A stretch of 64,000 nucleotides of DNA, taken from the IMG/VR virus record IMGVR_UViG_3300018004_000004, positions 1 to 64,000 of that record; one strand, written 5' to 3'. A program made the translations under genes and the position numbers. This document shows, piece after piece, positions 7,350 through 63,698 of the stretch. How positions within the stretch are numbered: the stretch's first letter is position 1; every line of letters begins with the position of its first letter. The notes beneath the pieces are model-generated. The model was not told the origin of the DNA. It was given only the letters and a program-made list of their open reading frames with translations, and made no database searches.

Positions 7350-7712
7350 ATGCCAGTCTTCACGTTTAGATGTGAGTGTGGTAATGAGTTCGACAAGATA
7401 GTCCACAACAAACACACCATAAGTAAGTGGTGCAAGCATTGCCAAGCACTAACGGTGTGGGAGGAGATCAAGGATCCACATGACGTCTGCTATCTCGAGA
7501 CCGTCTGTAGCCTCTGTCTTGGGAGTGAACACAAACCTCCTCTCGAGACCCCTTTGGTTGCTGCGCCTGAAGACAATACTGAGGCGGAATGCCCCAGTTG
7601 TGGCAAGATGGCCCCGCACGTCCTAGCTATTGCTACGTACGGTAGCACAGCTACAGGTCCGAACATGTATTGTTCTTCGTTGGGTTTCAGATTCAACTAC
7701 CAGGAGCCATAA
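7350..7712 (+). CDS. FmdB-like zinc-ribbon protein with extra CxxC pairs
   Basis: MPVFTFRCECGNEFD...CKHC...CSLC...CPSCG. Confidence 0.7.
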   Translation: MPVFTFRCECGNEFDKIVHNKHTISKWCKHCQALTVWEEIKDPHDVCYLETVCSLCLGSEHKPPLETPLVAAPEDNTEAECPSCGKMAPHVLAIATYGSTATGPNMYCSSLGFRFNYQEP

Positions 7713-8455
7713 TGGAATACCAAACACCTACCGACAATCTGCCTTCGCAGTCTCTTCAGCCTCAAGTAGGTAAGCTGAAGGTGTATGATTCGACAGTGCC
7801 TGTGGTTACTATTCCCCAGGCAATCGATACTCCTCGTCTGCGGCGCCAGCGCTATTCGAAGAACACTATTCGCCAGTGGCTGGAGAGCATGAGTGATCCC
7901 TATCCGGAACAGTATGTTCCTTTCCATGATGATCACCTGGACTTCGATCACGTCTGTGCCGGCGCCAAGCACCACCATTGGTGGAGAGGTGGCATGGCCG
8001 ACCATGTGAAGGAGATGATTGGGTACAGCCTGGACTTGTTAGACCTCTATCCCGGGGACCTGAAGGACAAGGTTACTAAGGATGAGATCATCCAGGCCTG
8101 CTATCTCCATGACTTCGCCAAGGTCTGGACCTATGAAGAGATCACGGAAGAAGACCGCGAGAAGGATCCCAAGAGGTACCTTGCGCAGCAGGTCTTCCGT
8201 CCTGTCTATGGAGCATTCGACATTGTAGATGAAGAGTCTAAGACTCTGTTGGAGCTGGGGCGCTGGGGTATAGTGCCCAGCGAAGCAGTGTGGTCAGCTG
8301 TGTTGTTTGCCGAAGGTGGCTATGCCGATCGCAACTTCACGATCAATGGCATCTCCAAGACAGGAGACACAGTCATGAAGAGGAATCCTCTGGCTGTGAT
8401 CATCCACATGGCTGATATGTATTCGTCCCAGATCCTGGGCCGGAGCTTGATTTGA
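7712..8455 (+). CDS. HD-domain phosphohydrolase (YhaM-like HD region)
   Basis: AKHHH..GGMADH, YLHDFAK, IIHMADMYSS; start at ATG 7712 after AGGAG. Confidence 0.8.
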   Translation: MEYQTPTDNLPSQSLQPQVGKLKVYDSTVPVVTIPQAIDTPRLRRQRYSKNTIRQWLESMSDPYPEQYVPFHDDHLDFDHVCAGAKHHHWWRGGMADHVKEMIGYSLDLLDLYPGDLKDKVTKDEIIQACYLHDFAKVWTYEEITEEDREKDPKRYLAQQVFRPVYGAFDIVDEESKTLLELGRWGIVPSEAVWSAVLFAEGGYADRNFTINGISKTGDTVMKRNPLAVIIHMADMYSSQILGRSLI

Positions 8456-18071: not shown

Positions 18072-18889
18072 TGGCCAAGAAGAAGCAAGACTCTATTCCC
18101 GGGCCGCCGGTGCCTTCTGGAGGGTATTCCCTGCCTCTGATAATGATTGGGCAGATGGAGAACTTCGTTAAGGAAGTTGGCGCCAAGACAGTAACGACTA
18201 CGGTGCCTCCTCTGCCTCCGCTTAAGAAGTTCGAAGACGAGATCAAGCCCAAGCCTGTCATCGTTATCAAGAAAAAGAAGAAGGTCACTAAGAAGAAGGT
18301 GGCCAAGAAGAAAGAGAAGCCCAAGGAAGAGCCGGAACGGCCAAGTCCTTTCAAGCCTGGCGATGAAGTCTGGGTCGAGTGTGGCAGCGAGTGGAAGAAG
18401 TTCAAGGTTGTGAAGTGCGGCAAGCCACAGAAAGGTTCCAAGGATTGGACCTATGACCTTAAGAATGAGCGAGATGAGGCCCGCAGCAGTAACGAATGCG
18501 AGATGATACCCGCCCAGGTCTTTACCTTGATAGCAACCGACGCCGTCAAGATGAAGGAGCCTGGCTGGACTGCCGCCTTGAATGATCAGTTCGACGGCAA
18601 GGCCAAGATCTTTGCCGTGTACCGCAAAGGTCAGAAAAGACCTTGGTGCTATTATGTCATTCCGGATCCTGAAAAGGTCTGGAAGGAATACAAATGGAAA
18701 GGCAAGAACTATTATGGCGCCACGGAAGACATGACAGCTACACTTCAAGTGCATTCTTCCTCTCACCAAATGCTTCGCCTTATCCCCATTGCCTCGGCGC
18801 CCAGCGAAATCCTGAGCTACTTGGGCCTTAAGGTTTACAACCGCCAGTACAAGAGAGATGACAATGGTGAAGATACTGAGGCAGGATAG
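18071..18889 (+). CDS. Lys/Pro-rich hypothetical protein
   Basis: 272 aa coupled ORF with basic low-complexity segment. Confidence 0.7.
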   Translation: MAKKKQDSIPGPPVPSGGYSLPLIMIGQMENFVKEVGAKTVTTTVPPLPPLKKFEDEIKPKPVIVIKKKKKVTKKKVAKKKEKPKEEPERPSPFKPGDEVWVECGSEWKKFKVVKCGKPQKGSKDWTYDLKNERDEARSSNECEMIPAQVFTLIATDAVKMKEPGWTAALNDQFDGKAKIFAVYRKGQKRPWCYYVIPDPEKVWKEYKWKGKNYYGATEDMTATLQVHSSSHQMLRLIPIASAPSEILSYLGLKVYNRQYKRDDNGEDTEAG

Positions 18890-19622
18890 ACCTCCCGAGT
18901 ATAGGGAAGGTCAGATGTTCGACCTCAGTTTCATGTACAGTAAGCAGTGCGACTTGTCGTGCTCCTTCTGTATGTACTCCTCAGGTCCTCAGGTCTACGA
19001 TCGTATGGACCTGCAGAAGTTTCGGAGTTGGATGAAGACCGTCCGTTGGGGTTTGATCAACGGTATTGGAATCTATGGAGGAGAGCCCTCTCTATTCCTG
19101 AAAGAGAACTCTATTATCCTTGAGCACACCAACAGTGTCCCTCGATTCTGCATCACGAACGGGACATGGAGCAAAAGTCCTGTCTCTACTGCGGCGTTCA
19201 TGCTTTGGGCCCTTGGCTGGAAGGTCCAGGTGTTCGTCTCTGGTACTGATCAGCACGTCGCCTTTCAGGATCGCGCAATGCTTGAGTATCTATCGCACAC
19301 TTATCCTACCATGGTGCGGCTTAAAGCCCCAGACACCCAAATCCTCCCTATGGGAAGACTTATTGGGGAACAAGTGAAGTGCACCGTTAAGTGCATGAGA
19401 CCGCGGTACATAGCTCCCACTCGTATTGCCGTCCAGCCGGACGGAACAATCATTTATCAGTCTTGCGATGGAGTCTATCCTGTGATAGGATCATGGGATA
19501 CAGATACGTTCGACGACATCGTGAAGAAGGTGGACGAATACACCCAACAGGGATTCCGTGCTGTGTGTCCCTACTATGAGGAGAGATGTCGGATAAAAAG
19601 CCTTTCGCAGGTTACCACGTAG
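18858..19622 (+). CDS. Radical SAM protein with partial SPASM/twitch-like C-terminus
   Basis: CDLSCSFC (CxxxCxxC), YGGEP, ITNG, C...IAVQPDGTI...C. Confidence 0.85.
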   Translation: MTMVKILRQDRPPEYREGQMFDLSFMYSKQCDLSCSFCMYSSGPQVYDRMDLQKFRSWMKTVRWGLINGIGIYGGEPSLFLKENSIILEHTNSVPRFCITNGTWSKSPVSTAAFMLWALGWKVQVFVSGTDQHVAFQDRAMLEYLSHTYPTMVRLKAPDTQILPMGRLIGEQVKCTVKCMRPRYIAPTRIAVQPDGTIIYQSCDGVYPVIGSWDTDTFDDIVKKVDEYTQQGFRAVCPYYEERCRIKSLSQVTT

Positions 19623-20140
19623 GCCAGACTATCTGGCAGCATGCGTCGTATTCGAAGGACGCATGGAGAGGATGTACTATCACAAGCATAGATCATACCG
19701 GCAATAGCGGGTATGGTAGTATGCGGGTGAAGCAGTTAGAGGGTACAAAGCAGGCTACTTTGTATGGCGGGTCTTATCATGCCATGACTCCTTTTGGAGT
19801 GGCCGGCCATGTGCCTCTTCATACCATCTACCTATTAGGTACTGGTATCGGAGAGCATTTCAACTGGCGCTTCGGTACAGACTTTGAAGTCTATACCTGC
19901 TGCACCCGGATGATTACGCCAGGTAAGGCACTGGGATTCTTGATCATACCTGAAGGTAGTCTGTACTCAGCTACGGAGGTGTACAAACATCCGGCCTACA
20001 AGACCTGGGTGGTAGCACCGAACCTGAGTGAGCTCTTCAGTTTTCTGGGCAACAAGTTGCCCGAGATCGCAGAGGTACATGAGCTAATCAATGGGAAGCA
20101 AAAAGCCAGCGTTCCAGACAATATCGTCCAAGCAGATTGA
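19586..20140 (+). CDS. Hypothetical protein
   Basis: GAGGAG SD, clean ORF. Confidence 0.7.
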   Translation: MSDKKPFAGYHVGQTIWQHASYSKDAWRGCTITSIDHTGNSGYGSMRVKQLEGTKQATLYGGSYHAMTPFGVAGHVPLHTIYLLGTGIGEHFNWRFGTDFEVYTCCTRMITPGKALGFLIIPEGSLYSATEVYKHPAYKTWVVAPNLSELFSFLGNKLPEIAEVHELINGKQKASVPDNIVQAD

Positions 20141-21476
20141 GGAGCACATTGATGTGCCCTTCCATGTCATTGGTACACCGGAGTGGATAGATGGATCTAT
20201 CGCTGAAGGAGCTGTTGCGGATTCGGCTATCACCAAGGTTCATTCTAAGAATGACCTATCTGCACCGCTTGCGTGGCTTACCAAACAACAAGAGCTTGGT
20301 ATCGACTCTGAGACTGGGGGAGAGAATAAACGCGACGGACTGGACCCCATATCTGAATCGTCCAAGATGCTTCTATTCCAGCTGGGTACTACCAAGATGG
20401 TTTACCTTATTGAACCAAAGCTGGTACCGGAGTTTAAGGGAATCCTGGAGGATCAAGACAGGCTCTTCCTAACTCAGAACGGAGTGTACGACTTTAAGTT
20501 CTGCCTGTCTAAGTATGGCGTGCACTTCATTAACTATCACTACGATGATAAAACCAAGGTATACATCCCCAGCCTGTACGATACGATGCTGGCGGAGCAA
20601 CTACTCACGGCGGGTTTATACGGAGTTCAGGTCGGTCTTGAAGAACTATCGGAGAAATACCCTCCACACTATCTTATCTCCAAAGCCGTCCGTCGCGAGT
20701 TTATTAACATGTCTGGCGTACTACAATACCGACACCTTTACTACGCCGCTCGTGACGTGTTCCTACTGTTTCCCATCAAGCAAGAGCAGATGAAGGAGAT
20801 CAAGAAGCACAAGGGGATGTGGGAGAGGATTCAAATAGAGTTCTGTGCTATGGCCGGCACGGCCGACGCAGAGCTGACAGGCTTTGACCTTGATGAACAA
20901 CGCATTGAGTCCACGCTGGATTACTGGCGCGCCAAGGCGAAGAACATCAGAGACAAAGCCATGAAGATTTATGATGATGCCCTCGACAAGGCAGGGAAGA
21001 AGCGTAACTTCCTCCTGCCTGATACGATGGAAGAGTTCGATATCAACTCCGCTACCAAGAAGTTGGCGGCTCTTCACAAGATGGGCTTTGATGTAAAGGA
21101 TACTAAGAGGGAGACGCTTCTTGCCTTAGAGACCGAGTTTGCTGATCTCTTGGGAGAGTACACTGAGTGTACCAAGATCATTTCAACTTATGGCGAAAGG
21201 ATGCTTGCTCGTAGGTCTACTACTGACGGTCGTCTGCACCCTGAGTTTAATCAGCTTGGGGCTGGCGATTTGGAAAAGCGTAAAGGCGGGGACAAAGCCA
21301 CGACTATTGCTACTGGAAGGTGGTCGTCGGACGCACAGCAGTTTCCCCGGCCGGATCACATCTTAGACCCTGTCGTTGGGGATGCGGCAGAGCATATCAA
21401 GCTTTTGTTCCCCGAGCAGTATCAGAAGGCTGTGGAGAAGTTCAATCAACCGGAGGTTGCCAGTGGCAAGAAATAG
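20091..21476 (+). CDS. polA: Family A DNA polymerase, N-terminal half (3'-5' exonuclease, thumb, start of palm)
   Basis: ExoI IDSET, ExoII QNGVYD, ExoIII YAARD, DGRLHPEFNQ, ATGRWSS. Confidence 0.88.
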   Translation: MGSKKPAFQTISSKQIEEHIDVPFHVIGTPEWIDGSIAEGAVADSAITKVHSKNDLSAPLAWLTKQQELGIDSETGGENKRDGLDPISESSKMLLFQLGTTKMVYLIEPKLVPEFKGILEDQDRLFLTQNGVYDFKFCLSKYGVHFINYHYDDKTKVYIPSLYDTMLAEQLLTAGLYGVQVGLEELSEKYPPHYLISKAVRREFINMSGVLQYRHLYYAARDVFLLFPIKQEQMKEIKKHKGMWERIQIEFCAMAGTADAELTGFDLDEQRIESTLDYWRAKAKNIRDKAMKIYDDALDKAGKKRNFLLPDTMEEFDINSATKKLAALHKMGFDVKDTKRETLLALETEFADLLGEYTECTKIISTYGERMLARRSTTDGRLHPEFNQLGAGDLEKRKGGDKATTIATGRWSSDAQQFPRPDHILDPVVGDAAEHIKLLFPEQYQKAVEKFNQPEVASGKK

Positions 21477-21918
21477 AGTTATCCGTACCACGAAGTACAA
21501 GCTGACGGAGATCAAGGAATCACATCCTGAGATCTATCAGGAAGCGACAGAGCTGTTCACCGAGTATGAGCGCTATCGCACCACACTCGTTGAAGAGTAT
21601 CGTAAGCTTCAAGAGGCTGTGGCAGATTTTGATATCTCCCGCGCCATGACAACCAAGTCTGCTGGTCGCTTCTTCCGCAAGGTCGGCGAAGCCATCGGCC
21701 TGGTTCGAGTGGAACCCCAATGGTGGGTGTATCGCGACAAGGAAGGCAACATCATTCTCGAGTCTGCGTTCACTGAACGTGACTATCGGAATGCTGCGCG
21801 CGCACAGAAGGCTGGTCTGTCTCGTGAAGTTCAGTCGGAAGACGGCGCCGAGCTCTTCGAACAAGATGAAACTGAAGATGGGAAGCACGAGGACGAAAGC
21901 ATCGGCTTCCAACCGTAA
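21463..21918 (+). CDS. Hypothetical protein inserted between the two polymerase halves
   Basis: GGAGG SD then GTG 21463; acidic tail; no nuclease motif seen. Confidence 0.7.
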   Translation: MARNRVIRTTKYKLTEIKESHPEIYQEATELFTEYERYRTTLVEEYRKLQEAVADFDISRAMTTKSAGRFFRKVGEAIGLVRVEPQWWVYRDKEGNIILESAFTERDYRNAARAQKAGLSREVQSEDGAELFEQDETEDGKHEDESIGFQP

Positions 21919-21927
21919 GGAGATGAC

Positions 21928-22914
21928 ATGGCCGGCGTAAAACCAGAGCTGTTAGGTATCAGCAACGGAAGGGAGTATTATCTCTGCCCGGCCGATAAGA
22001 AACATCCACAGCCATGGATAGCCTGGCGAGTCCCTGATATCCGAGAGGGTATCAGGGCTCGTGCGGGCTGGAAGATCCTAGGCGCGGACTACAGTCAGAT
22101 CGAAGTCCGTATCATGGCCTGGGAATCCCAGGATGAGTGGTTGCTGGAGGCTTTGAACTCGGGTAAAGACATCCATTGCTATATGGCATCGGACGTTCAT
22201 GGGGTACCCTACGACGACTTCTTCTATGCATACAAACATGAAGACCATCCCTTATACAATCTCTATTATGGCTGGCGGTCGGAGATTAAGACCACAACAT
22301 TCGGTGTGCCGTATGGCGCGGGCGCAAAGCAGGTGGCTCGACAGATTAATATGTCGAGAAAACCAGGAGACACCTCTCCACCTTACACCGAAGAACAAGC
22401 CGAGCAGCTGATCGAAGACTACTTCAAGAAGGCGAAGGGTCTAAAGATCTGGCTGGACAAACAAGGCAAGCATGGCCTTAAGTATGGCTGGTCCAAGTCT
22501 CTGGGCGGCCACTACAGGTTCTATCAGATTCCGTTCAAGGATCCCGAGGGTGGAAAGGAAGAGAAGGATCGTTACAATGAGATTATCAGTCAGATCAAAA
22601 GATACACAGGTAACCACCCCATTCAAGCGGCATGTGCTGACGCCCTTAAGATGGCTGTCAGTAAGATCTATCTCGATCTCCGCGGGGGTCAATCCTCTGG
22701 CCCACTCGTTCACGAAGCACATTTCCTCCTTTTTGTCCACGATGAACTCGTACTCACTTGTCCAGACAGCGAGGTCGATGCGGTCAACAAGATCATGGTG
22801 GACGGGATGCAGTGGGCATACAATCAGTTGATCCCGTCTGAGGGACAGACGAATCATGATCACATTATTCACAAGACGGACGTGACCGTTGCTGATTACT
22901 GGAAGAAAGGGTAA
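21928..22914 (+). CDS. polA: Family A DNA polymerase, C-terminal half (motifs A, B, C)
   Basis: ADYSQIEVR, RSEIKTTTFGVPYG, NHPIQ..AD..K, FVHDEL; own AAGGAG SD. Confidence 0.92.
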   Translation: MAGVKPELLGISNGREYYLCPADKKHPQPWIAWRVPDIREGIRARAGWKILGADYSQIEVRIMAWESQDEWLLEALNSGKDIHCYMASDVHGVPYDDFFYAYKHEDHPLYNLYYGWRSEIKTTTFGVPYGAGAKQVARQINMSRKPGDTSPPYTEEQAEQLIEDYFKKAKGLKIWLDKQGKHGLKYGWSKSLGGHYRFYQIPFKDPEGGKEEKDRYNEIISQIKRYTGNHPIQAACADALKMAVSKIYLDLRGGQSSGPLVHEAHFLLFVHDELVLTCPDSEVDAVNKIMVDGMQWAYNQLIPSEGQTNHDHIIHKTDVTVADYWKKG

Positions 22915-23128
22915 GCCTCCTAACTGGGCGTATTGGACGATCGTTAAGTTCTGCGCACAGCAGAGAAGGTATTGGAGATGGAAGCATGGTCTGTAGAAAC
23001 TGGAGTACCAATCCATTGGTGCGGGGACGAAGGTGGGTTATGAAAGCACCTATCTCACAGTTGTTCCCCGGTTTGTGGTTGTTACGTCAGGGATTCTTCG
23101 TGAGATGGTCCCTAAGGCAGCCACTCTA

Positions 23129-23482
23129 ATGCCAGGTAAACTACGAGCTGGTAAGGCTTTACTCGCACAACGCCTGGTCGATCAGCTTGGTTATTCCCAA
23201 CGGAAAGCAGCTAAGCTGGTCGATCAGGTCGTAGAGGTATGGAAGAAGGCCATCAAGGAAGGCCGAGATGTAGACGTCGAAGGACTGGGTACCTTGACGA
23301 TCGTTAAGAGGAAGAAAGGCCATCGCTTTATCAATGGGTTGGCCGGTCCTGCCAAGACGATCGTGGAAGCATACAAGTTCAACACAGTCCGGCTGAAGAC
23401 CGATGTGAAGTTTGAGGAGGTTGAGAATGCCCGGGATGAGCAAGAACCCGTTCGGGGGCCAGAAGAGCCTCAACAATCTTGA
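23129..23482 (+). CDS. HU/IHF-like DNA-binding protein
   Basis: KALLAQRL...SQRKAAKLVDQV...IKEGRDVDVEGLGTLTIVKRK. Confidence 0.8.
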   Translation: MPGKLRAGKALLAQRLVDQLGYSQRKAAKLVDQVVEVWKKAIKEGRDVDVEGLGTLTIVKRKKGHRFINGLAGPAKTIVEAYKFNTVRLKTDVKFEEVENARDEQEPVRGPEEPQQS

Positions 23483-24116
23483 CGACGATTTCATGGCATC
23501 GTTGTTCAAGGGAGAGTTAAATGTGGAACAAACTATCGCACTCAGAATCATCAAGATGTCCGTCAGGGACTACTTATATTTTGGACTGGGGCGCAACGGG
23601 GTTACGCCCGAAAAGTTCCTCGAAGTTTACTATTACTTGTACCGGGCCCGCGGGAACGATTCCTGGACTTGGGGCGACCTGCGTACTACCCAGCGGTATC
23701 GGGGTGTGGATGGTAAACTCGTCTCTACTACGCGCTCGCTATCACCTAAGGAAGTCCTATGGCGCTGCTTCGACACGCATTATAGTCTATGTGCCTTGCC
23801 TGACGCATTGCCCATGAAGAAGTTCTTGGATCAAATCAAGGCGAAGAGAGAGGCAATCCTACAAGCCAATGAGAAGCAGGTACTTACGTATATGGATAAA
23901 TACCGTGCACAGGAATGGAAACGGCTTAATCGGAGAAAAGGTAAGCATGCTTTCCCTCGGGTCAATCCTATTCCACTCCTTGTTGCTCCGGACGACGTCA
24001 AGGCGTTTGCGCAGCTCTATCTCTTCGGCCGAGCTCCTAAAAAGGAAGTGGTGGGCAAAATGCTTACGCGCGGAAAGCGAACGTACAAGTCTTTCCTGTT
24101 CACGGAGTTAGAATGA
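23427..24116 (+). CDS. Hypothetical protein
   Basis: GAGGAGG SD before ATG 23427. Confidence 0.7.
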   Translation: MPGMSKNPFGGQKSLNNLDDDFMASLFKGELNVEQTIALRIIKMSVRDYLYFGLGRNGVTPEKFLEVYYYLYRARGNDSWTWGDLRTTQRYRGVDGKLVSTTRSLSPKEVLWRCFDTHYSLCALPDALPMKKFLDQIKAKREAILQANEKQVLTYMDKYRAQEWKRLNRRKGKHAFPRVNPIPLLVAPDDVKAFAQLYLFGRAPKKEVVGKMLTRGKRTYKSFLFTELE

Positions 24117-24294: not shown

Positions 24295-27200
24295 ATGAAG
24301 AAAATCGAGTACGTAAATGCACTTGATTTCGATCTCGATGAGGTAGAAGTGGAACAGAATGATCAACAGTCCTCACCCGTACAGCCTTATGTTCCGCCCG
24401 CTCCGGTGGTTAAGAAAGCGAAGGTTCATAAAGCAGTGGTGCCCCTCGGAGTATCTGATCATCCATCCGTTACTCTTCACAAGGGTGGCGGCAAGATCGT
24501 CATTACACCGAACGACGTCCATGCCGCAGTTGCCCTTATCGAAATCAGAGAACGAATCGCCCAGCTTGCTAACCCGGTTCTTACGGCTACTCGGGAGAAG
24601 CTAGAGATTCAGTTGCTGCCGGATGTCCAGCCTATGGACTTTGCTCGGGCCACCAGGGCCTGGAGCTTGGTCAATGTGAAGCTGGACGAACATCCGATGG
24701 TAAGACTGCTCGCGCGCTATCACCTGGACGTGACAATCTCTCCATCGTTGGGTAACTGGGTCAAGAAGGAAGAGAAGCGCCTGGCTAAGGAGCTGACTCC
24801 TTTCCTGCTGCCCGACTTCAAGGATGAACGGTCTCTATTCGAGAAGGTAGAGGCTGGTATGGTCCTTGAATGTACCAAGAACTTTGACTTTGATAACCAA
24901 AGGATCTTTACCAAGGGCCAGCGGTATCAGGTGGTTGACACAGCCCGTGGCGGACAAGGTGGAGGCAACGCCGAGGACGCGAAGGAACACCAAGACGGCA
25001 TGGTGAAGATCAGCAAGGTGGCTATTGCACCCGGCTGTAAGATTATCATGGCAGATGACACCGTCTTCCCGTGGACAGTGTTCAACGGCGATTTGGAGAA
25101 CAACTTCCACTATGAAGAGAAAGTCATCTATGAACCTTCTAAGTGTGTACCCGCCAAGTATCCCGGCCTCTTGGCTATGTACCAAAAGCGACTGGATGCG
25201 ATGGGTCTCGAGCTGTACGACCACGTCAAAGTCGACGCTGTACAAGAAGCTCTTAAGCGTGGCACCCTCAATGGTAAACTCATGCGCATGGGAAAGACGT
25301 CGGAGTCTATCGTCTGTGCCATGTTTTGGGGCAGTAAGCGTGTGGCTATTGTTGCGCCACGCAATGCTCGCCTATTCACGGTCAAGGAGTTCGAGAGGCT
25401 CGGGCTCAAGAACTACGTCATTGTTGACAGCATGGAGGACCTCAAGAAACCTGGAACGTTCTATCTCCTGACTTACAGCTGGATGAAGAAGACGTTCGAT
25501 CCTCATCGTGTCTTCCGGCGCAAGGGCCAAAGCTATTTGCACCGGACATACACGGAGAACAAGAAAGAGATCATCGTCGAGCACAAGTGTCCGTTCTGTA
25601 AGCGCTCGCTTGAACGCCTCGAGATTAAGAAGAACAAGACTGAAGGTGGGTTCCTAGTCGAGAAGACTGTTGGCTGGACCAAGGAACGCGGCTATATTTG
25701 CAGGAATCAACTTTGCGACTGCAAGGCCAAGTTCGCTTCTCGTACGGGCGCCCCGATTAATGGTGCAGCCTGGGGATATACGATCGACTCGACGACTCGC
25801 AAGATCAAGAGAGCGAAGCCGATAAAGCTCGGTGGTAAGACTGTTAACATCACATCTTTCACCGGCGCTAAGGTCGATCAGATCGTCCAGAAGAAAGGCA
25901 AGGTCAAGAACGACGAAGGAAAGATGGTTGACGGTCTCATCGAAGAGACCATAACCTTCCAGGATAACTACGTTGGTTGGATTGACTGGGGCCTGAAGTT
26001 CCACAAGGACTGCAAGGACAAGAATACCAAGGGCCGGTATTGCCACGAATGCCACCAAGCAGACGCGGTCTGGATTCCGGCGCCCTACAAGCAGAGAATA
26101 ACTACTGACCGTGGGAAGAAGGTCCATCTCAAGGACTACTTCACCGGAGCAATCATCGATGAGATACATACAATCAAATCATTGGACTCTGACACGGGGA
26201 AAGCAATACGCTCTATACGGGCCAAGCGCCGCATGGGCCTTACTGGGACCCTTATGCCCAATACTCCTGCGGACGCGTTTTGGCCGCTTCATTGGGTGTT
26301 TAAGGGAGGATCAGCGGCATTCCCGTACCATCAGAAAGATGGAGCCACAGAGTTCTACGATCGCTTCTGCGAATACATCAACATCAAGCGTGGGCACGGG
26401 CTGAAAGATAGTCGTAAGATGTTACCCTACTTGAAGAATCCAGTTGCCTTCTGGGAGCTGATGTCTTCAAAGATGGTCCGGAGGAACTACGAAGATGAAC
26501 TCGTTAAAGCCTCTCTCGCAAAGGCCAATCGATACTACCCGAATGTTGAGTTTCATCGCGTGGAATCGGTTATGGATCCAAAGCAAGCGCAGCTCATGGT
26601 GGCTGCAATCAACCACTTCGAGTCGAACTTTAATCAGTACTCTGCTCAGGTACAACAGGCTGGGCATCTCCTCAACCAGGCAATGGTTGTCTCGCAAATG
26701 GTCTACCTCCGAATCGGAGCGACCTGCCCCGAGTACTTCAACGTTAAGCTGAAGAAGGTTGGGAAGGCAGCAGTATATGATGGACCCCTGGGTGGCGGCA
26801 AGATGGCTGATATTCAGAACATCTGTGCCACCAAGGTCGCGGCCAATGAAAAGGTCGTGGTCCTCACTGACTTTGTGGAGATGAGAAAATCACTGGCGAA
26901 GATGCTGTCGGAACATAATCCGATCGTCTTCGATGGTACATGGGATGACGATGAGAGAAACGAGAACTTCGAGGCTTTCCTTGAAGACCCTACTCGGAAA
27001 ATATTCATTGCAGGAACACGTCAGATTCGGGAAGGGACTAACCTGTCTGCCGCCAACACAGTTATTTGTTGCGATCTTTTGTGGGAGCCAGGCCTACAGC
27101 AACAGGCATGGTCTCGTGCGTTTACTCCTACCTCTGAGAATCGTACGTGCAATGTCTACGTCTTGATGGCGAAGAATAGCATCGACGAACATGTCTACAA

Positions 27201-27408
27201 CACTTTTTATGCTAAAGTGGCGGCTGCTGAACAAGCACTTGATCGTAAGGTCATTAACCGTCGCGCTCACCAGATCGATTTGCGTTGGTTCGTTGACCGG
27301 GTGCTTAGCGATCGCGAAGGGCTACTCTCTTACCTTAAGGAAGAAGGAGAGAAAGGCATCTTCGTAACTGAGAAGACCTTCCAGATGATCGAGGATCGAG
27401 ATGTCTAA
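24295..27408 (+). CDS. SNF2-like SF2 helicase/translocase with Cys-rich insert; ends in tag IEDRDV
   Basis: MRMGKT, IIDEIH, LTGTLMPN, EKVVVLT, EGTNLSAANTVI, WEPG..QQAWSR. Confidence 0.85.
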   Translation: MKKIEYVNALDFDLDEVEVEQNDQQSSPVQPYVPPAPVVKKAKVHKAVVPLGVSDHPSVTLHKGGGKIVITPNDVHAAVALIEIRERIAQLANPVLTATREKLEIQLLPDVQPMDFARATRAWSLVNVKLDEHPMVRLLARYHLDVTISPSLGNWVKKEEKRLAKELTPFLLPDFKDERSLFEKVEAGMVLECTKNFDFDNQRIFTKGQRYQVVDTARGGQGGGNAEDAKEHQDGMVKISKVAIAPGCKIIMADDTVFPWTVFNGDLENNFHYEEKVIYEPSKCVPAKYPGLLAMYQKRLDAMGLELYDHVKVDAVQEALKRGTLNGKLMRMGKTSESIVCAMFWGSKRVAIVAPRNARLFTVKEFERLGLKNYVIVDSMEDLKKPGTFYLLTYSWMKKTFDPHRVFRRKGQSYLHRTYTENKKEIIVEHKCPFCKRSLERLEIKKNKTEGGFLVEKTVGWTKERGYICRNQLCDCKAKFASRTGAPINGAAWGYTIDSTTRKIKRAKPIKLGGKTVNITSFTGAKVDQIVQKKGKVKNDEGKMVDGLIEETITFQDNYVGWIDWGLKFHKDCKDKNTKGRYCHECHQADAVWIPAPYKQRITTDRGKKVHLKDYFTGAIIDEIHTIKSLDSDTGKAIRSIRAKRRMGLTGTLMPNTPADAFWPLHWVFKGGSAAFPYHQKDGATEFYDRFCEYINIKRGHGLKDSRKMLPYLKNPVAFWELMSSKMVRRNYEDELVKASLAKANRYYPNVEFHRVESVMDPKQAQLMVAAINHFESNFNQYSAQVQQAGHLLNQAMVVSQMVYLRIGATCPEYFNVKLKKVGKAAVYDGPLGGGKMADIQNICATKVAANEKVVVLTDFVEMRKSLAKMLSEHNPIVFDGTWDDDERNENFEAFLEDPTRKIFIAGTRQIREGTNLSAANTVICCDLLWEPGLQQQAWSRAFTPTSENRTCNVYVLMAKNSIDEHVYNTFYAKVAAAEQALDRKVINRRAHQIDLRWFVDRVLSDREGLLSYLKEEGEKGIFVTEKTFQMIEDRDV

Positions 27409-63609: not shown

Positions 63610-63698
63610 TGCGGGGTCGACTAGTCAGGCCGATGTCGCCAGTCTCATAAACTGGAACCGAAAGGGCACCGTGGGTTCGAATCCCACCTCCGCTACCA
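63610..63698 (+). tRNA. tRNA with CAT anticodon (Met or Ile2), long variable arm, U1:U72 mismatch
   Basis: TGCGGGG/CTCCGCT-A-CCA; anticodon arm CCAGT-CTCATAA-ACTGG; T-arm GTGGG-TTCGAAT-CCCAC. Confidence 0.85.

What the first reader, a model, noticed from the sequence alone, without database searches (positions are those of the whole stretch)
20091..22914. Family A DNA polymerase split into two genes inside the palm, with no intein and an unrelated gene between
Seen: the first ORF stops about 40 aa after TGRWSSDAQQFPR. The second has its own AAGGAG SD and about 37 extra residues before IREGIRARAGWKILGADYSQIE. In E. coli Pol I-type enzymes these segments are only a few residues apart. Both halves keep catalytic motifs. 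No intein termini (N-terminal C/S block, HN-C/S/T) are visible, and readthrough of the TAG hits TGA 17 codons later. The 151-aa middle ORF has no recognisable endonuclease motif. Inference: a natural heterodimeric PolA whose new terminal extensions may form a dimerisation module; the middle gene could be an accessory subunit, or RNA splicing of an unrecognised type may occur.
Basis: partly seen in the sequence, partly recalled or inferred. Interest (0 to 1): 0.62.

Follow-up and report, generated by a model that had tools for sequence, protein, structure and literature searches.

The report
Split phage DNA polymerase, three genes
A 215-kb peat phage encodes its only DNA polymerase as two separately translated halves with a small conserved gene of unknown function between them, an old and widespread natural "gene in pieces" rather than an error, an intron or an intein.

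Summary
ORF N (20091-21476, 461 aa) carries the 3'-5' exonuclease, the thumb and the TGR motif. ORF C (21928-22914, 328 aa) carries polymerase motifs A, B and C. A 151-aa ORF M (21463-21918) lies between them. Nothing of the polymerase is missing: a phage polymerase profile runs from N into C with a 4-position gap. N's last ~41 residues and C's first ~38 are extra. No intron (Rfam blank, no non-coding space), intein motifs or conserved recoding site were found. Four independent peat runs are colinear with the window here.

The N-M-C order recurs in every relative examined. More than 100 protein clusters of each half have split-gene lengths, down to ~35% identity. More distant relatives are contiguous and lack both M and the extensions. 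One contiguous relative nested inside the split clade joins N tail to C head directly; its AF2 model puts the split point in a low-confidence loop of an ordered helix/hairpin insert.

M is a distinct, always stand-alone family under purifying selection that co-diverges with the polymerase. Its role is unresolved. Best reading: a non-covalently assembled split family A polymerase, with M probably an accessory or assembly factor. It is a new member of a known kind.

The parts
20091..21476 (+). N half of the split family A DNA polymerase (461 aa): 3'-5' exonuclease, thumb, motif 2 (TGRWSS at 21312-21329)
   Evidence: Invariant exonuclease residues D72, E74, D134, Y218, D222 in an 87-sequence alignment.
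21351..21473 (+). N tail: about 41 extra residues after ...FPRP, absent from contiguous outgroup polymerases; predicted helix
   Evidence: Outgroups join N residue 420 to C residue 39 with about 4 aa between. Pattern conserved in relatives. Equivalent to helix 425-442 in the AF2 model of contiguous P0135.
21451..21455 (+). GGAGG ribosome-binding site for M, inside N's last codons
   Evidence: GGAGG or AAGGAG 6-7 nt before GTG-GCA in the window, L006, L027, L029 and L030.
21463..21918 (+). M: 151-aa conserved protein of unknown function (basic N-terminus, ~56-residue helix, beta-hairpin, helix, acidic tail ending GF-Q-P)
   Evidence: dN/dS 0.084 against L003. A single copy in the 215-kb genome.
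21917..21922 (+). AAGGAG ribosome-binding site for C, overlapping M's TAA stop (21916-21918)
21928..22914 (+). C half of the polymerase (328 aa): motif A (22081-22104), motif B (22276-22317), motif C (22735-22746)
   Evidence: Invariant D54, R117, K121, Y129, H271, D272, E273.
21928..22041 (+). C head: about 38 extra residues before IREGIRA; conserved LGI..G.EYYL.PADK.H..P...WRVP; predicted beta-hairpin plus a strand
   Evidence: Equivalent to strands 454-459, 462-467 and 477-482, with pLDDT 85-92, in the P0135 model.

Best explanation
The only DNA polymerase of this 215-kb peat phage is a family A enzyme encoded in pieces. N (exonuclease, thumb, first palm elements) and C (rest of palm, fingers, all three polymerase motifs) are translated as separate polypeptides from one compact operon, N-M-C. 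M starts inside N's last codons, and C starts 9 nt after M's stop. N and C then reassemble non-covalently into one active enzyme. The break lies in a flexible loop of a roughly 70-residue insert between motif 2 and motif A. The N tail (a helix) and the C head (a hairpin plus a strand) are the two halves of that insert and most likely act as the interface that holds the pieces together. This parallels the tails of the split NrdA of phage Aeh1. The split is ancient and inherited vertically. At least one lineage reversed it by deleting M and fusing N to C's own start codon. M is a real protein that has stayed linked to the split gene. Most likely (about 0.45) it is an accessory or assembly factor of the split polymerase or replisome. 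Its long helix suggests oligomerisation, and its acidic tail with a conserved (D/E)-L-F-E motif suggests partner binding. Shown: the anatomy, conservation, selection, phylogeny and lack of splicing signals. Inferred: N:C assembly, the interface role of the tails, and any role of M.
For: Anatomy:
- Profile matches are contiguous across N and C, and catalytic residues are invariant in both halves.
- It is the sole polymerase in a record that CheckV rates 100% complete: one PolA, no PolB.

Distribution of the split:
- N-M-C is present in every relative examined: L003, L006, L007/L008, L027-L030, L033, L034, L042, L043 and the P0031 and P0169 contigs.
- 119 of the 120 listed N relatives are 359-489 aa; 118 of the 120 listed C relatives are 288-380 aa.
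- Outgroups at about 27% identity are contiguous, without the insert or M.

Re-fusion:
- Contiguous P0135 and P0239 carry N tail joined directly to C head, with C's Met retained.
- P0135 is nested in the split clade next to split P0169 and P0172, SH-aLRT 97.
- AF2 model of P0135: pLDDT 90.5. The insert is ordered (helix 425-442, strands 454-482) and the split point lies in the low-confidence loop 443-453.

M:
- dN/dS is 0.084 for M and 0.079 for C.
- M identities track N identities, r = 0.96 over 36 pairs.
- M is never fused to another protein among 1.84 billion representatives.

Precedents: split gp43 halves co-purify and are active (PMC2988022); Aeh1 NrdA tails are essential (PMC3045599).
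Against: - No experiment or RNA data: none of the runs that hold the stretch is recorded as RNA.
- N:C binding was not scored. The one complex job, with M as partner, gave score 0.00, which is no verdict.
- I saw only the secondary structure and confidence of the P0135 model, not its contacts, so tail-head packing is inferred.
- P0135 and P0239 persist without any M within 22 kb. M is therefore dispensable once the gene is contiguous, which also fits a passenger gene.
- The overlap between N and M is not universal: L033, L034 and L042 have gaps or an extra ORF.
Confidence: 0.8

Rival explanations
1. M is a selfish or neutral passenger, such as a domesticated remnant of the mobile element that split the gene. 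It has no role in the polymerase and is retained for another reason, for example expression coupling of C or an unrelated phage function.
For: Lineages with a re-fused gene lack M. The junctions are hot spots for mobile genes: HNH endonuclease genes sit beside M in L007 and upstream of C in L029, and P0309 has an intein in motif A. M has no detectable link to any known replication protein.
Against: M is under purifying selection as strong as that on C. It co-diverges with N and C down to about 26-30% identity with no sign of recent mobility. It has no nuclease motif. Its position directly after N is kept even where other genes intrude.
Confidence: 0.3
2. The interruption is removed at the RNA level, by a group I or II intron, an unrecognised splicing system or ribosomal bypass, giving one polymerase chain.
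For: Group I introns do interrupt phage polymerase genes, and the MEP401 authors raise this possibility for their split gene (PMC10580990). No RNA data exist here.
Against: A permissive Rfam scan of 19500-23500 found nothing. N overlaps M by 14 nt and M ends 9 nt before C, so no non-coding RNA core fits. The whole insert is an ORF under protein-level selection. N's stop and C's ribosome-binding site and ATG are conserved. The re-fused gene keeps C's initiator Met, as expected if C is normally initiated there.
Confidence: 0.03
3. N and C are ligated after translation by a split intein formed by the N tail and the C head.
For: The extension lengths (41 and 38 aa) are in the range of some split-intein pieces. 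Fractured genes with split inteins and a free-standing endonuclease are known (PMC2677866). A relative has a classical intein elsewhere in C.
Against: There is no Cys or Ser at the start of the N tail. There is no His-Asn followed by Cys, Ser or Thr at the end of the C head, which ends ...WRVP then DIRE. In the contiguous P0135 both extensions are retained as part of the mature protein and fold as an ordered insert.
Confidence: 0.02
4. Recoding, a +1 frameshift at N's stop plus readthrough of M's TAA, makes an N-M-C fusion. M and C are in the same frame in the window.
For: M and C share a frame in the window, L003, L027 and L030 (coordinates). The sequence AAA-TAG-A at N's end could in principle shift +1.
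Against: There is no conserved slippery site: the last codons before the stop are AAA, TCG and ACG in the window, L027 and L030. In L030 a second in-frame stop lies between M and C. L006 has M and C in different frames. Other genes intervene in L007, L029 and L034. No M-polymerase fusion exists among 1.84 billion representatives.
Confidence: 0.02
5. The polymerase gene is broken, as a decaying pseudogene or an assembly error.
For: In L043, a 3.26-Mb Acidobacteriaceae contig, N is spread over several frames.
Against: The structure is identical in many independent assemblies and runs. Catalytic residues are invariant and dN/dS is low. It is the only polymerase in a complete 215-kb genome.
Confidence: 0.02

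Closest known systems
Split PolA of OM43 phages MEP401/MEP402 (gp13, gp14, gp15; PMC10580990)
   Same: Exonuclease plus N-terminal PolA in one ORF, a small ORF of unknown function, then C-terminal PolA. The split is also between motif 2 (...PNLQNF) and motif A, and the genes are tightly packed.
   Different: Probably an independent event. The polymerases are only about 24% identical over partial alignments. The break is some 12-15 residues further downstream, just before the motif A strand, with no large tail/head insert. gp14 (77 aa) is not an M homolog: the M profile finds nothing in that region.
Aeromonas phage Aeh1 nrdA split by mobE; tails essential for assembly (PMC3045599)
   Same: An essential replication-related enzyme is split into two translated pieces by an inserted gene. 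New C- and N-terminal tails arose at the break. No RNA or protein splicing is involved.
   Different: A different enzyme. There the inserted gene is an active homing endonuclease, whereas M has no nuclease signature. Here the tails are predicted to form one folded insert.
Split PolB gp43 (43A/43B) of T4-related Aeromonas phages (Petrov et al. 2010, as cited in PMC2988022)
   Same: A replicative polymerase encoded in two genes whose products co-purify and are active. An endonuclease gene or an untranslated spacer sits at the break.
   Different: Family B, not family A. There is no conserved third protein.
LUZ24-like phages and T7-like cyanophage clade B split PolA
   Same: Family A polymerase encoded in several genes, with an endonuclease VII gene between pieces in LUZ24.
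   Different: The breaks are elsewhere: between the exonuclease and polymerase domains, and near the C-terminus in LUZ24. There is no M homolog.
Fractured genes with split inteins and a free-standing endonuclease (PMC2677866)
   Same: Two half-genes with an unrelated gene between them, often in replication proteins of phages and metagenomes.
   Different: Intein blocks are absent here, and the extensions stay in the mature contiguous homolog.

Membership tests
Family A DNA polymerase (Pol I / T7 type) | Match to the PF00476 polymerase domain and the PF01612 3'-5' exonuclease domain | tested here: met
   N: PF01612 at 3.2e-9 and PF00476 positions 7-123. C: PF00476 positions 140-364 at 2.4e-40. 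phrog_17 runs contiguously across N and C.
Family A DNA polymerase (Pol I / T7 type) | Catalytic motifs A (DYSQIE), B (R...K...F..YG) and C (HDE), and exonuclease motifs I-III | tested here: met
   Invariant D54, R117, K121, Y129, H271, D272, E273 in C, and D72, E74, D134, Y218, D222 in N.
Family A DNA polymerase (Pol I / T7 type) | Klenow-like fold | tested here: met
   Tested on the contiguous relative P0135, not on the window proteins themselves. AF2 pLDDT 90.5. Foldseek hits Klenow, Bst, Pol theta and apPol with E of about 1e-27 to 1e-29 and target TM-scores of 0.75-0.79.
Phage 'genes in pieces' (gene split by an inserted ORF, products reassemble) | Relatives have one contiguous gene at the same place | tested here: met
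   L009-L018 are contiguous, joining N residue 420 to C residue 39. P0135 and P0239 are contiguous.
Phage 'genes in pieces' (gene split by an inserted ORF, products reassemble) | Each piece has its own translation signals; no splicing element | tested here: met
   Ribosome-binding sites and start codons are conserved. Rfam is blank. No intein motifs.
Phage 'genes in pieces' (gene split by an inserted ORF, products reassemble) | The intervening gene is a homing endonuclease | tested here: not met
   M has no Pfam, PHROG, PDB or fold match to any nuclease. HNH genes occur only as additional insertions in L007 and L029.
Phage 'genes in pieces' (gene split by an inserted ORF, products reassemble) | The pieces associate and give activity | not testable with these tools
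   This needs co-expression and an assay. The one complex job asked about M and gave no verdict.
Intein / split intein | Cys or Ser as first intein residue; His-Asn followed by Cys, Ser or Thr at the C-terminal junction; blocks A, B, F, G | tested here: not met
   The N tail starts P-D-H-I-L. The C head ends W-R-V-P before D-I-R-E. For contrast, P0309 has a true intein, C...SHN followed by S, in motif A.
Group I / group II intron | Structured ribozyme core matching Rfam models, and non-coding flanks | tested here: not met
   No Rfam match at E up to 1 in 19500-23500. N and M overlap by 14 nt, and the M-C gap is 9 nt.
MEP401-type split PolA | Homologous middle ORF and the same break point | tested here: not met
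   The M profile finds nothing in the MEP401 region. The break is about 12-15 residues away.

The most novel reading that the evidence does not exclude
M is an obligate third subunit, so the replicase is a three-piece family A holoenzyme (N + M + C). M would act as the clamp or assembly factor that the split made necessary, or as a replisome adaptor that uses its acidic tail. This would be a new class of PolA accessory protein that co-evolved with a broken polymerase over a deep phage lineage.
Probability: 0.3. Interest if true: 0.65.

Novelty: new member of a known kind. Interest (0 to 1): 0.45.

Why it matters
Split replicative polymerases show how phages neutralise gene disruption without splicing. 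This clade offers a large natural data set: more than 100 diverged N/C pairs, a natural re-fusion, and extra endonuclease and intein invasions. It could be used to study how a polymerase tolerates a break next to its active site. The permissive site and interface could guide engineered split polymerases. It also flags a conserved, unannotated protein family (M) tied to a polymerase, and it warns annotators and PolA-marker surveys that these peat and soil phages carry half-length polA genes.

Tried and rejected
- **Complex prediction.** N + C + M with M as partner scored 0.00, which the tool calls no verdict. I do not use it for or against binding.
- **Fold and sequence searches on M.** Foldseek against PDB gave no match at E of 0.001 or better. 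VIA-align wide gave only generic coiled-coil matches to helix 18-78, Z up to 5.8. A PDB profile search gave nothing below E 0.49. The ESM Atlas gave only unnamed viral clusters at scores of 0.81 or less.
- **Terminase hit.** tblastn of M hit a 'terminase A' gene of Pseudomonas phage SC_8_H2H8_2017 at E 9e-5. M profiles do not reproduce it, so I rejected it as spurious.
- **Downstream ORF in the contiguous relative.** The 146-aa ORF after contiguous P0135 is not an M homolog.
- **Alignment A5.** Made from P0135 plus the half proteins, it was misaligned, with N halves laid on the C region. I replaced it with A6, which adds contiguous outgroups as a backbone.
- **Related-locus scans.** With A1 it returned only four close relatives.
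- **RNA evidence.** None of the runs that hold the stretch is recorded as RNA, so splicing could not be tested directly.
- **Promoter and terminator scan.** It was at background level and has little weight.
Full report
**1. The observation**

The three ORFs are as described.

- N is 20091-21476 (461 aa).
- M is 21463-21918. It is 151 aa from a GTG preceded by GGAGG at 21451-21455, and it overlaps N's last 14 nt.
- C is 21928-22914 (328 aa). Its AAGGAG overlaps M's TAA stop, and 5 nt separate it from the ATG.

Pfam places the 3'-5' exonuclease domain and positions 7-123 of the family A polymerase model on N, and positions 140-364 on C. The phage polymerase profile phrog_17 covers 667-990 on N and 995-1214 on C. 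No part of the enzyme is missing. About 41 residues at N's end and about 38 at C's start are additional.

- Exonuclease residues (D72, E74, D134, Y218, D222) are invariant in an alignment of 87 N halves.
- Polymerase motifs A (D54), B (R117, K121, Y129) and C (H271-D272-E273) are invariant in 92 C halves.
- All polymerase catalytic carboxylates are in C. N contributes the exonuclease, the thumb and the TGR DNA-binding motif.

**2. Not an artefact**

- The window lies in a 215,395-bp virus record that CheckV rates complete.
- That record has this one PolA and no PolB.
- The 2.8-kb stretch is held nearly word for word by 20 public peat, wetland or soil runs from 18 studies.
- Contigs from four runs not marked as a possible source lie colinearly on 19800-23200 with no joints, insertions or deletions. 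One contig spans 20558-23124.

**3. No splicing or recoding signal**

- A permissive Rfam scan of 19500-23500 found nothing.
- There is no non-coding space for a ribozyme: N and M overlap by 14 nt, and the M-C gap is 9 nt.
- Intein junction residues are absent. A relative's C half (P0309) does carry a textbook intein, Cys...His-Asn then Ser, inside motif A, so a typical intein is easy to recognise in this gene family.
- M and C share a reading frame in the window, but not in L006. In L030 a second in-frame stop intervenes.
- The codons before N's stop differ between relatives (AAA, TCG, ACG), so no frameshift site is conserved.
- Among 1.84 billion representative proteins, M-like sequences are all stand-alone proteins of about 130-170 aa or shorter fragments. 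The two long multi-stretch hits look like repeat proteins, which I did not check. None is fused to a polymerase.

**4. Relatives**

- Close and distant relatives show the same N-M-C order. These are L003 at about 95% identity, L006 at 70%, L007/L008 at 42%, L027-L030, L033, L034, L042, L043 and the P0031 and P0169 contigs.
- Of the 120 best N relatives, 119 are 359-489 aa, down to 35% identity.
- Of the 120 best C relatives, 118 are 288-380 aa.
- More distant polymerases, at about 27% identity (L009-L018), are contiguous. They join the equivalents of N residue 420 and C residue 39 with about 4 residues, and have neither the extensions nor M.
- The extensions are conserved within the split clade. 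The C head is strongly conserved (LGI..G.EYYL.PADK.H..P...WRVP). The N tail is less so.

**5. A natural re-fusion**

- P0135 (762 aa) and the N-truncated P0239 are contiguous. In both, the N tail runs directly into the C head, and a Met sits where C's initiator would be.
- In a tree of 117 N-region sequences rooted on 8 contiguous outgroups, P0135 is nested deep in the split clade. It is sister to the split P0169 and P0172, with SH-aLRT 97.
- The P0169 contig has N (434 aa), a 162-aa gene and C (336 aa).
- One ancient split followed by a later deletion of M is the most parsimonious history.
- The P0135 locus has an integrase and bacterial flanking genes, and no M homolog within 22 kb.

The AF2 model of P0135 was built on an alignment checked for correct placement of the halves. 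It has pLDDT 90.5 and pTM 0.89 and a Klenow-like fold. In that model the insert comprises:

- a short strand (418-421) and a helix (425-442), which correspond to the N tail;
- a low-confidence loop (443-453), which is the split point;
- a hairpin (454-467) and a further strand (477-482), which correspond to the C head, with pLDDT 85-92.

I could not inspect contacts in the model.

From memory only: Pol theta's insert 2 and an insertion in T7 polymerase lie in the same inter-motif segment, so this is a known permissive site. That is a lead, not a tested result.

**6. The middle gene**

- M has no Pfam, PHROG, PDB-sequence or fold relative.
- Its AF2 model (pLDDT 77) has a basic, conserved N-terminal segment (R-T-T-K-Y-K-L), one helix of about 56 residues, a beta-hairpin, a helix and a disordered acidic tail.
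- Across 69 diverse members the conserved features are E-P-.-W..YR, FTERD.RNA.RAQ and a (D/E)-L-F-E motif in the tail. Close relatives end in G-F.
- dN/dS between the window and L003 is 0.084 for M and 0.079 for C.
- Over nine loci, M identities track N identities with r = 0.96. The pairs are not independent. This still argues for co-divergence and against recent mobility.

M is therefore a functional protein inherited together with the split polymerase. Its survival-neutral loss in the re-fused lineage shows that it is dispensable when the enzyme is one chain. That fits an assembly or accessory role tied to the split state, but equally a domesticated passenger. The complex prediction gave no verdict.

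**7. Mobile elements at the junctions**

- L007 has an HNH-type endonuclease gene on the opposite strand between N and M. It has a second one immediately upstream of C, with a 54-aa ORF that duplicates the C head.
- L029 has the same endonuclease family upstream of C, and an ORF that begins with C's first residues.
- This makes it plausible that a mobile cassette caused the original split, but M itself shows no nuclease features.

**8. Comparison with known systems**

- The closest described case is the OM43 phage MEP401/402 polymerase: exonuclease plus N-terminal PolA, a small unknown ORF, then C-terminal PolA (PMC10580990). Its break is in the same motif 2 to motif A segment but about 12-15 residues downstream. 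It has no tail/head insert and an unrelated middle ORF.
- The mechanistic precedents are the Aeh1 split NrdA, whose insertion-derived tails are essential (PMC3045599), and the split gp43 of T4-related phages, whose halves co-purify and are active (PMC2988022).
- LUZ24 and clade B T7-like cyanophages split PolA at other places.

**9. Verdict**

This is a real, ancient, widespread split family A polymerase, most likely working as a non-covalent N:C enzyme (confidence about 0.8). It is a new member of a known kind. The open and more interesting question is whether M is a third subunit (about 0.3-0.45). The host is probably Acidobacteriaceae: the module occurs on a Terracidiphilus MAG contig and on a 3.26-Mb Acidobacteriaceae contig.

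Noticed in passing
P0309 (relative of C; no window coordinates): One relative's C half carries a classical intein inserted exactly in motif A (GADY, then C...SHN, then SQIEV). This polymerase family is therefore hit by inteins as well as by endonuclease genes.
   Followed up: partly
L007:6274-6909 (-), 7533-7697 (+), 7716-8309 (+): In the 42%-identity relative, HNH/endonuclease VII-like genes (phrog_1035, phrog_3322) sit between N and M and just upstream of C. A 54-aa ORF duplicates the C head. This looks like the footprint of a homing event.
   Followed up: partly
L029:5877-7163: Two extra genes lie between M and C. The second is the same phrog_3322 endonuclease family as in L007. The first ORF begins with C's own first residues (MAGNKP...).
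   Followed up: partly
L042 and L043 (genome contigs): The N-M-C module occurs on a Terracidiphilus MAG contig (SPRUCE peat) and on a 3.26-Mb Acidobacteriaceae contig, which suggests an Acidobacteriaceae host or a prophage. In L043 the N half is spread over several frames, either from decay or from long-read indel errors.
   Followed up: partly
window 23033-23482: An HU-like DNA-binding protein gene (PF00216) directly follows C. This order is conserved in relatives, and a roughly 1000-aa SNF2-type helicase gene follows (24295-27408). In L034 that helicase carries a weak LAGLIDADG_3 hit.
   Followed up: no
window 18858-19622: A radical SAM ORF lies just upstream of the polymerase module. Relatives have an RlaP nucleotidyltransferase gene a few genes upstream.
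   Followed up: no
window 21246-21311 (N residues about 386-407); P0135 residues 384-415: A basic, Gly-rich loop of about 17 residues lies between FNQ and TGR. It is specific to this clade and predicted disordered (pLDDT under 50). This is a second clade-specific insertion in the polymerase.
   Followed up: no
window 63610-63698: A tRNA-Met (CAT) gene is the only tRNA found in the 64-kb window. All long ORFs of the window lie on the + strand.
   Followed up: no
L035 (P0135 locus): The contiguous, re-fused polymerase sits in an element with a tyrosine integrase next to bacterial ABC-transporter genes. That is a different lifestyle or context from the 215-kb phage.
   Followed up: partly
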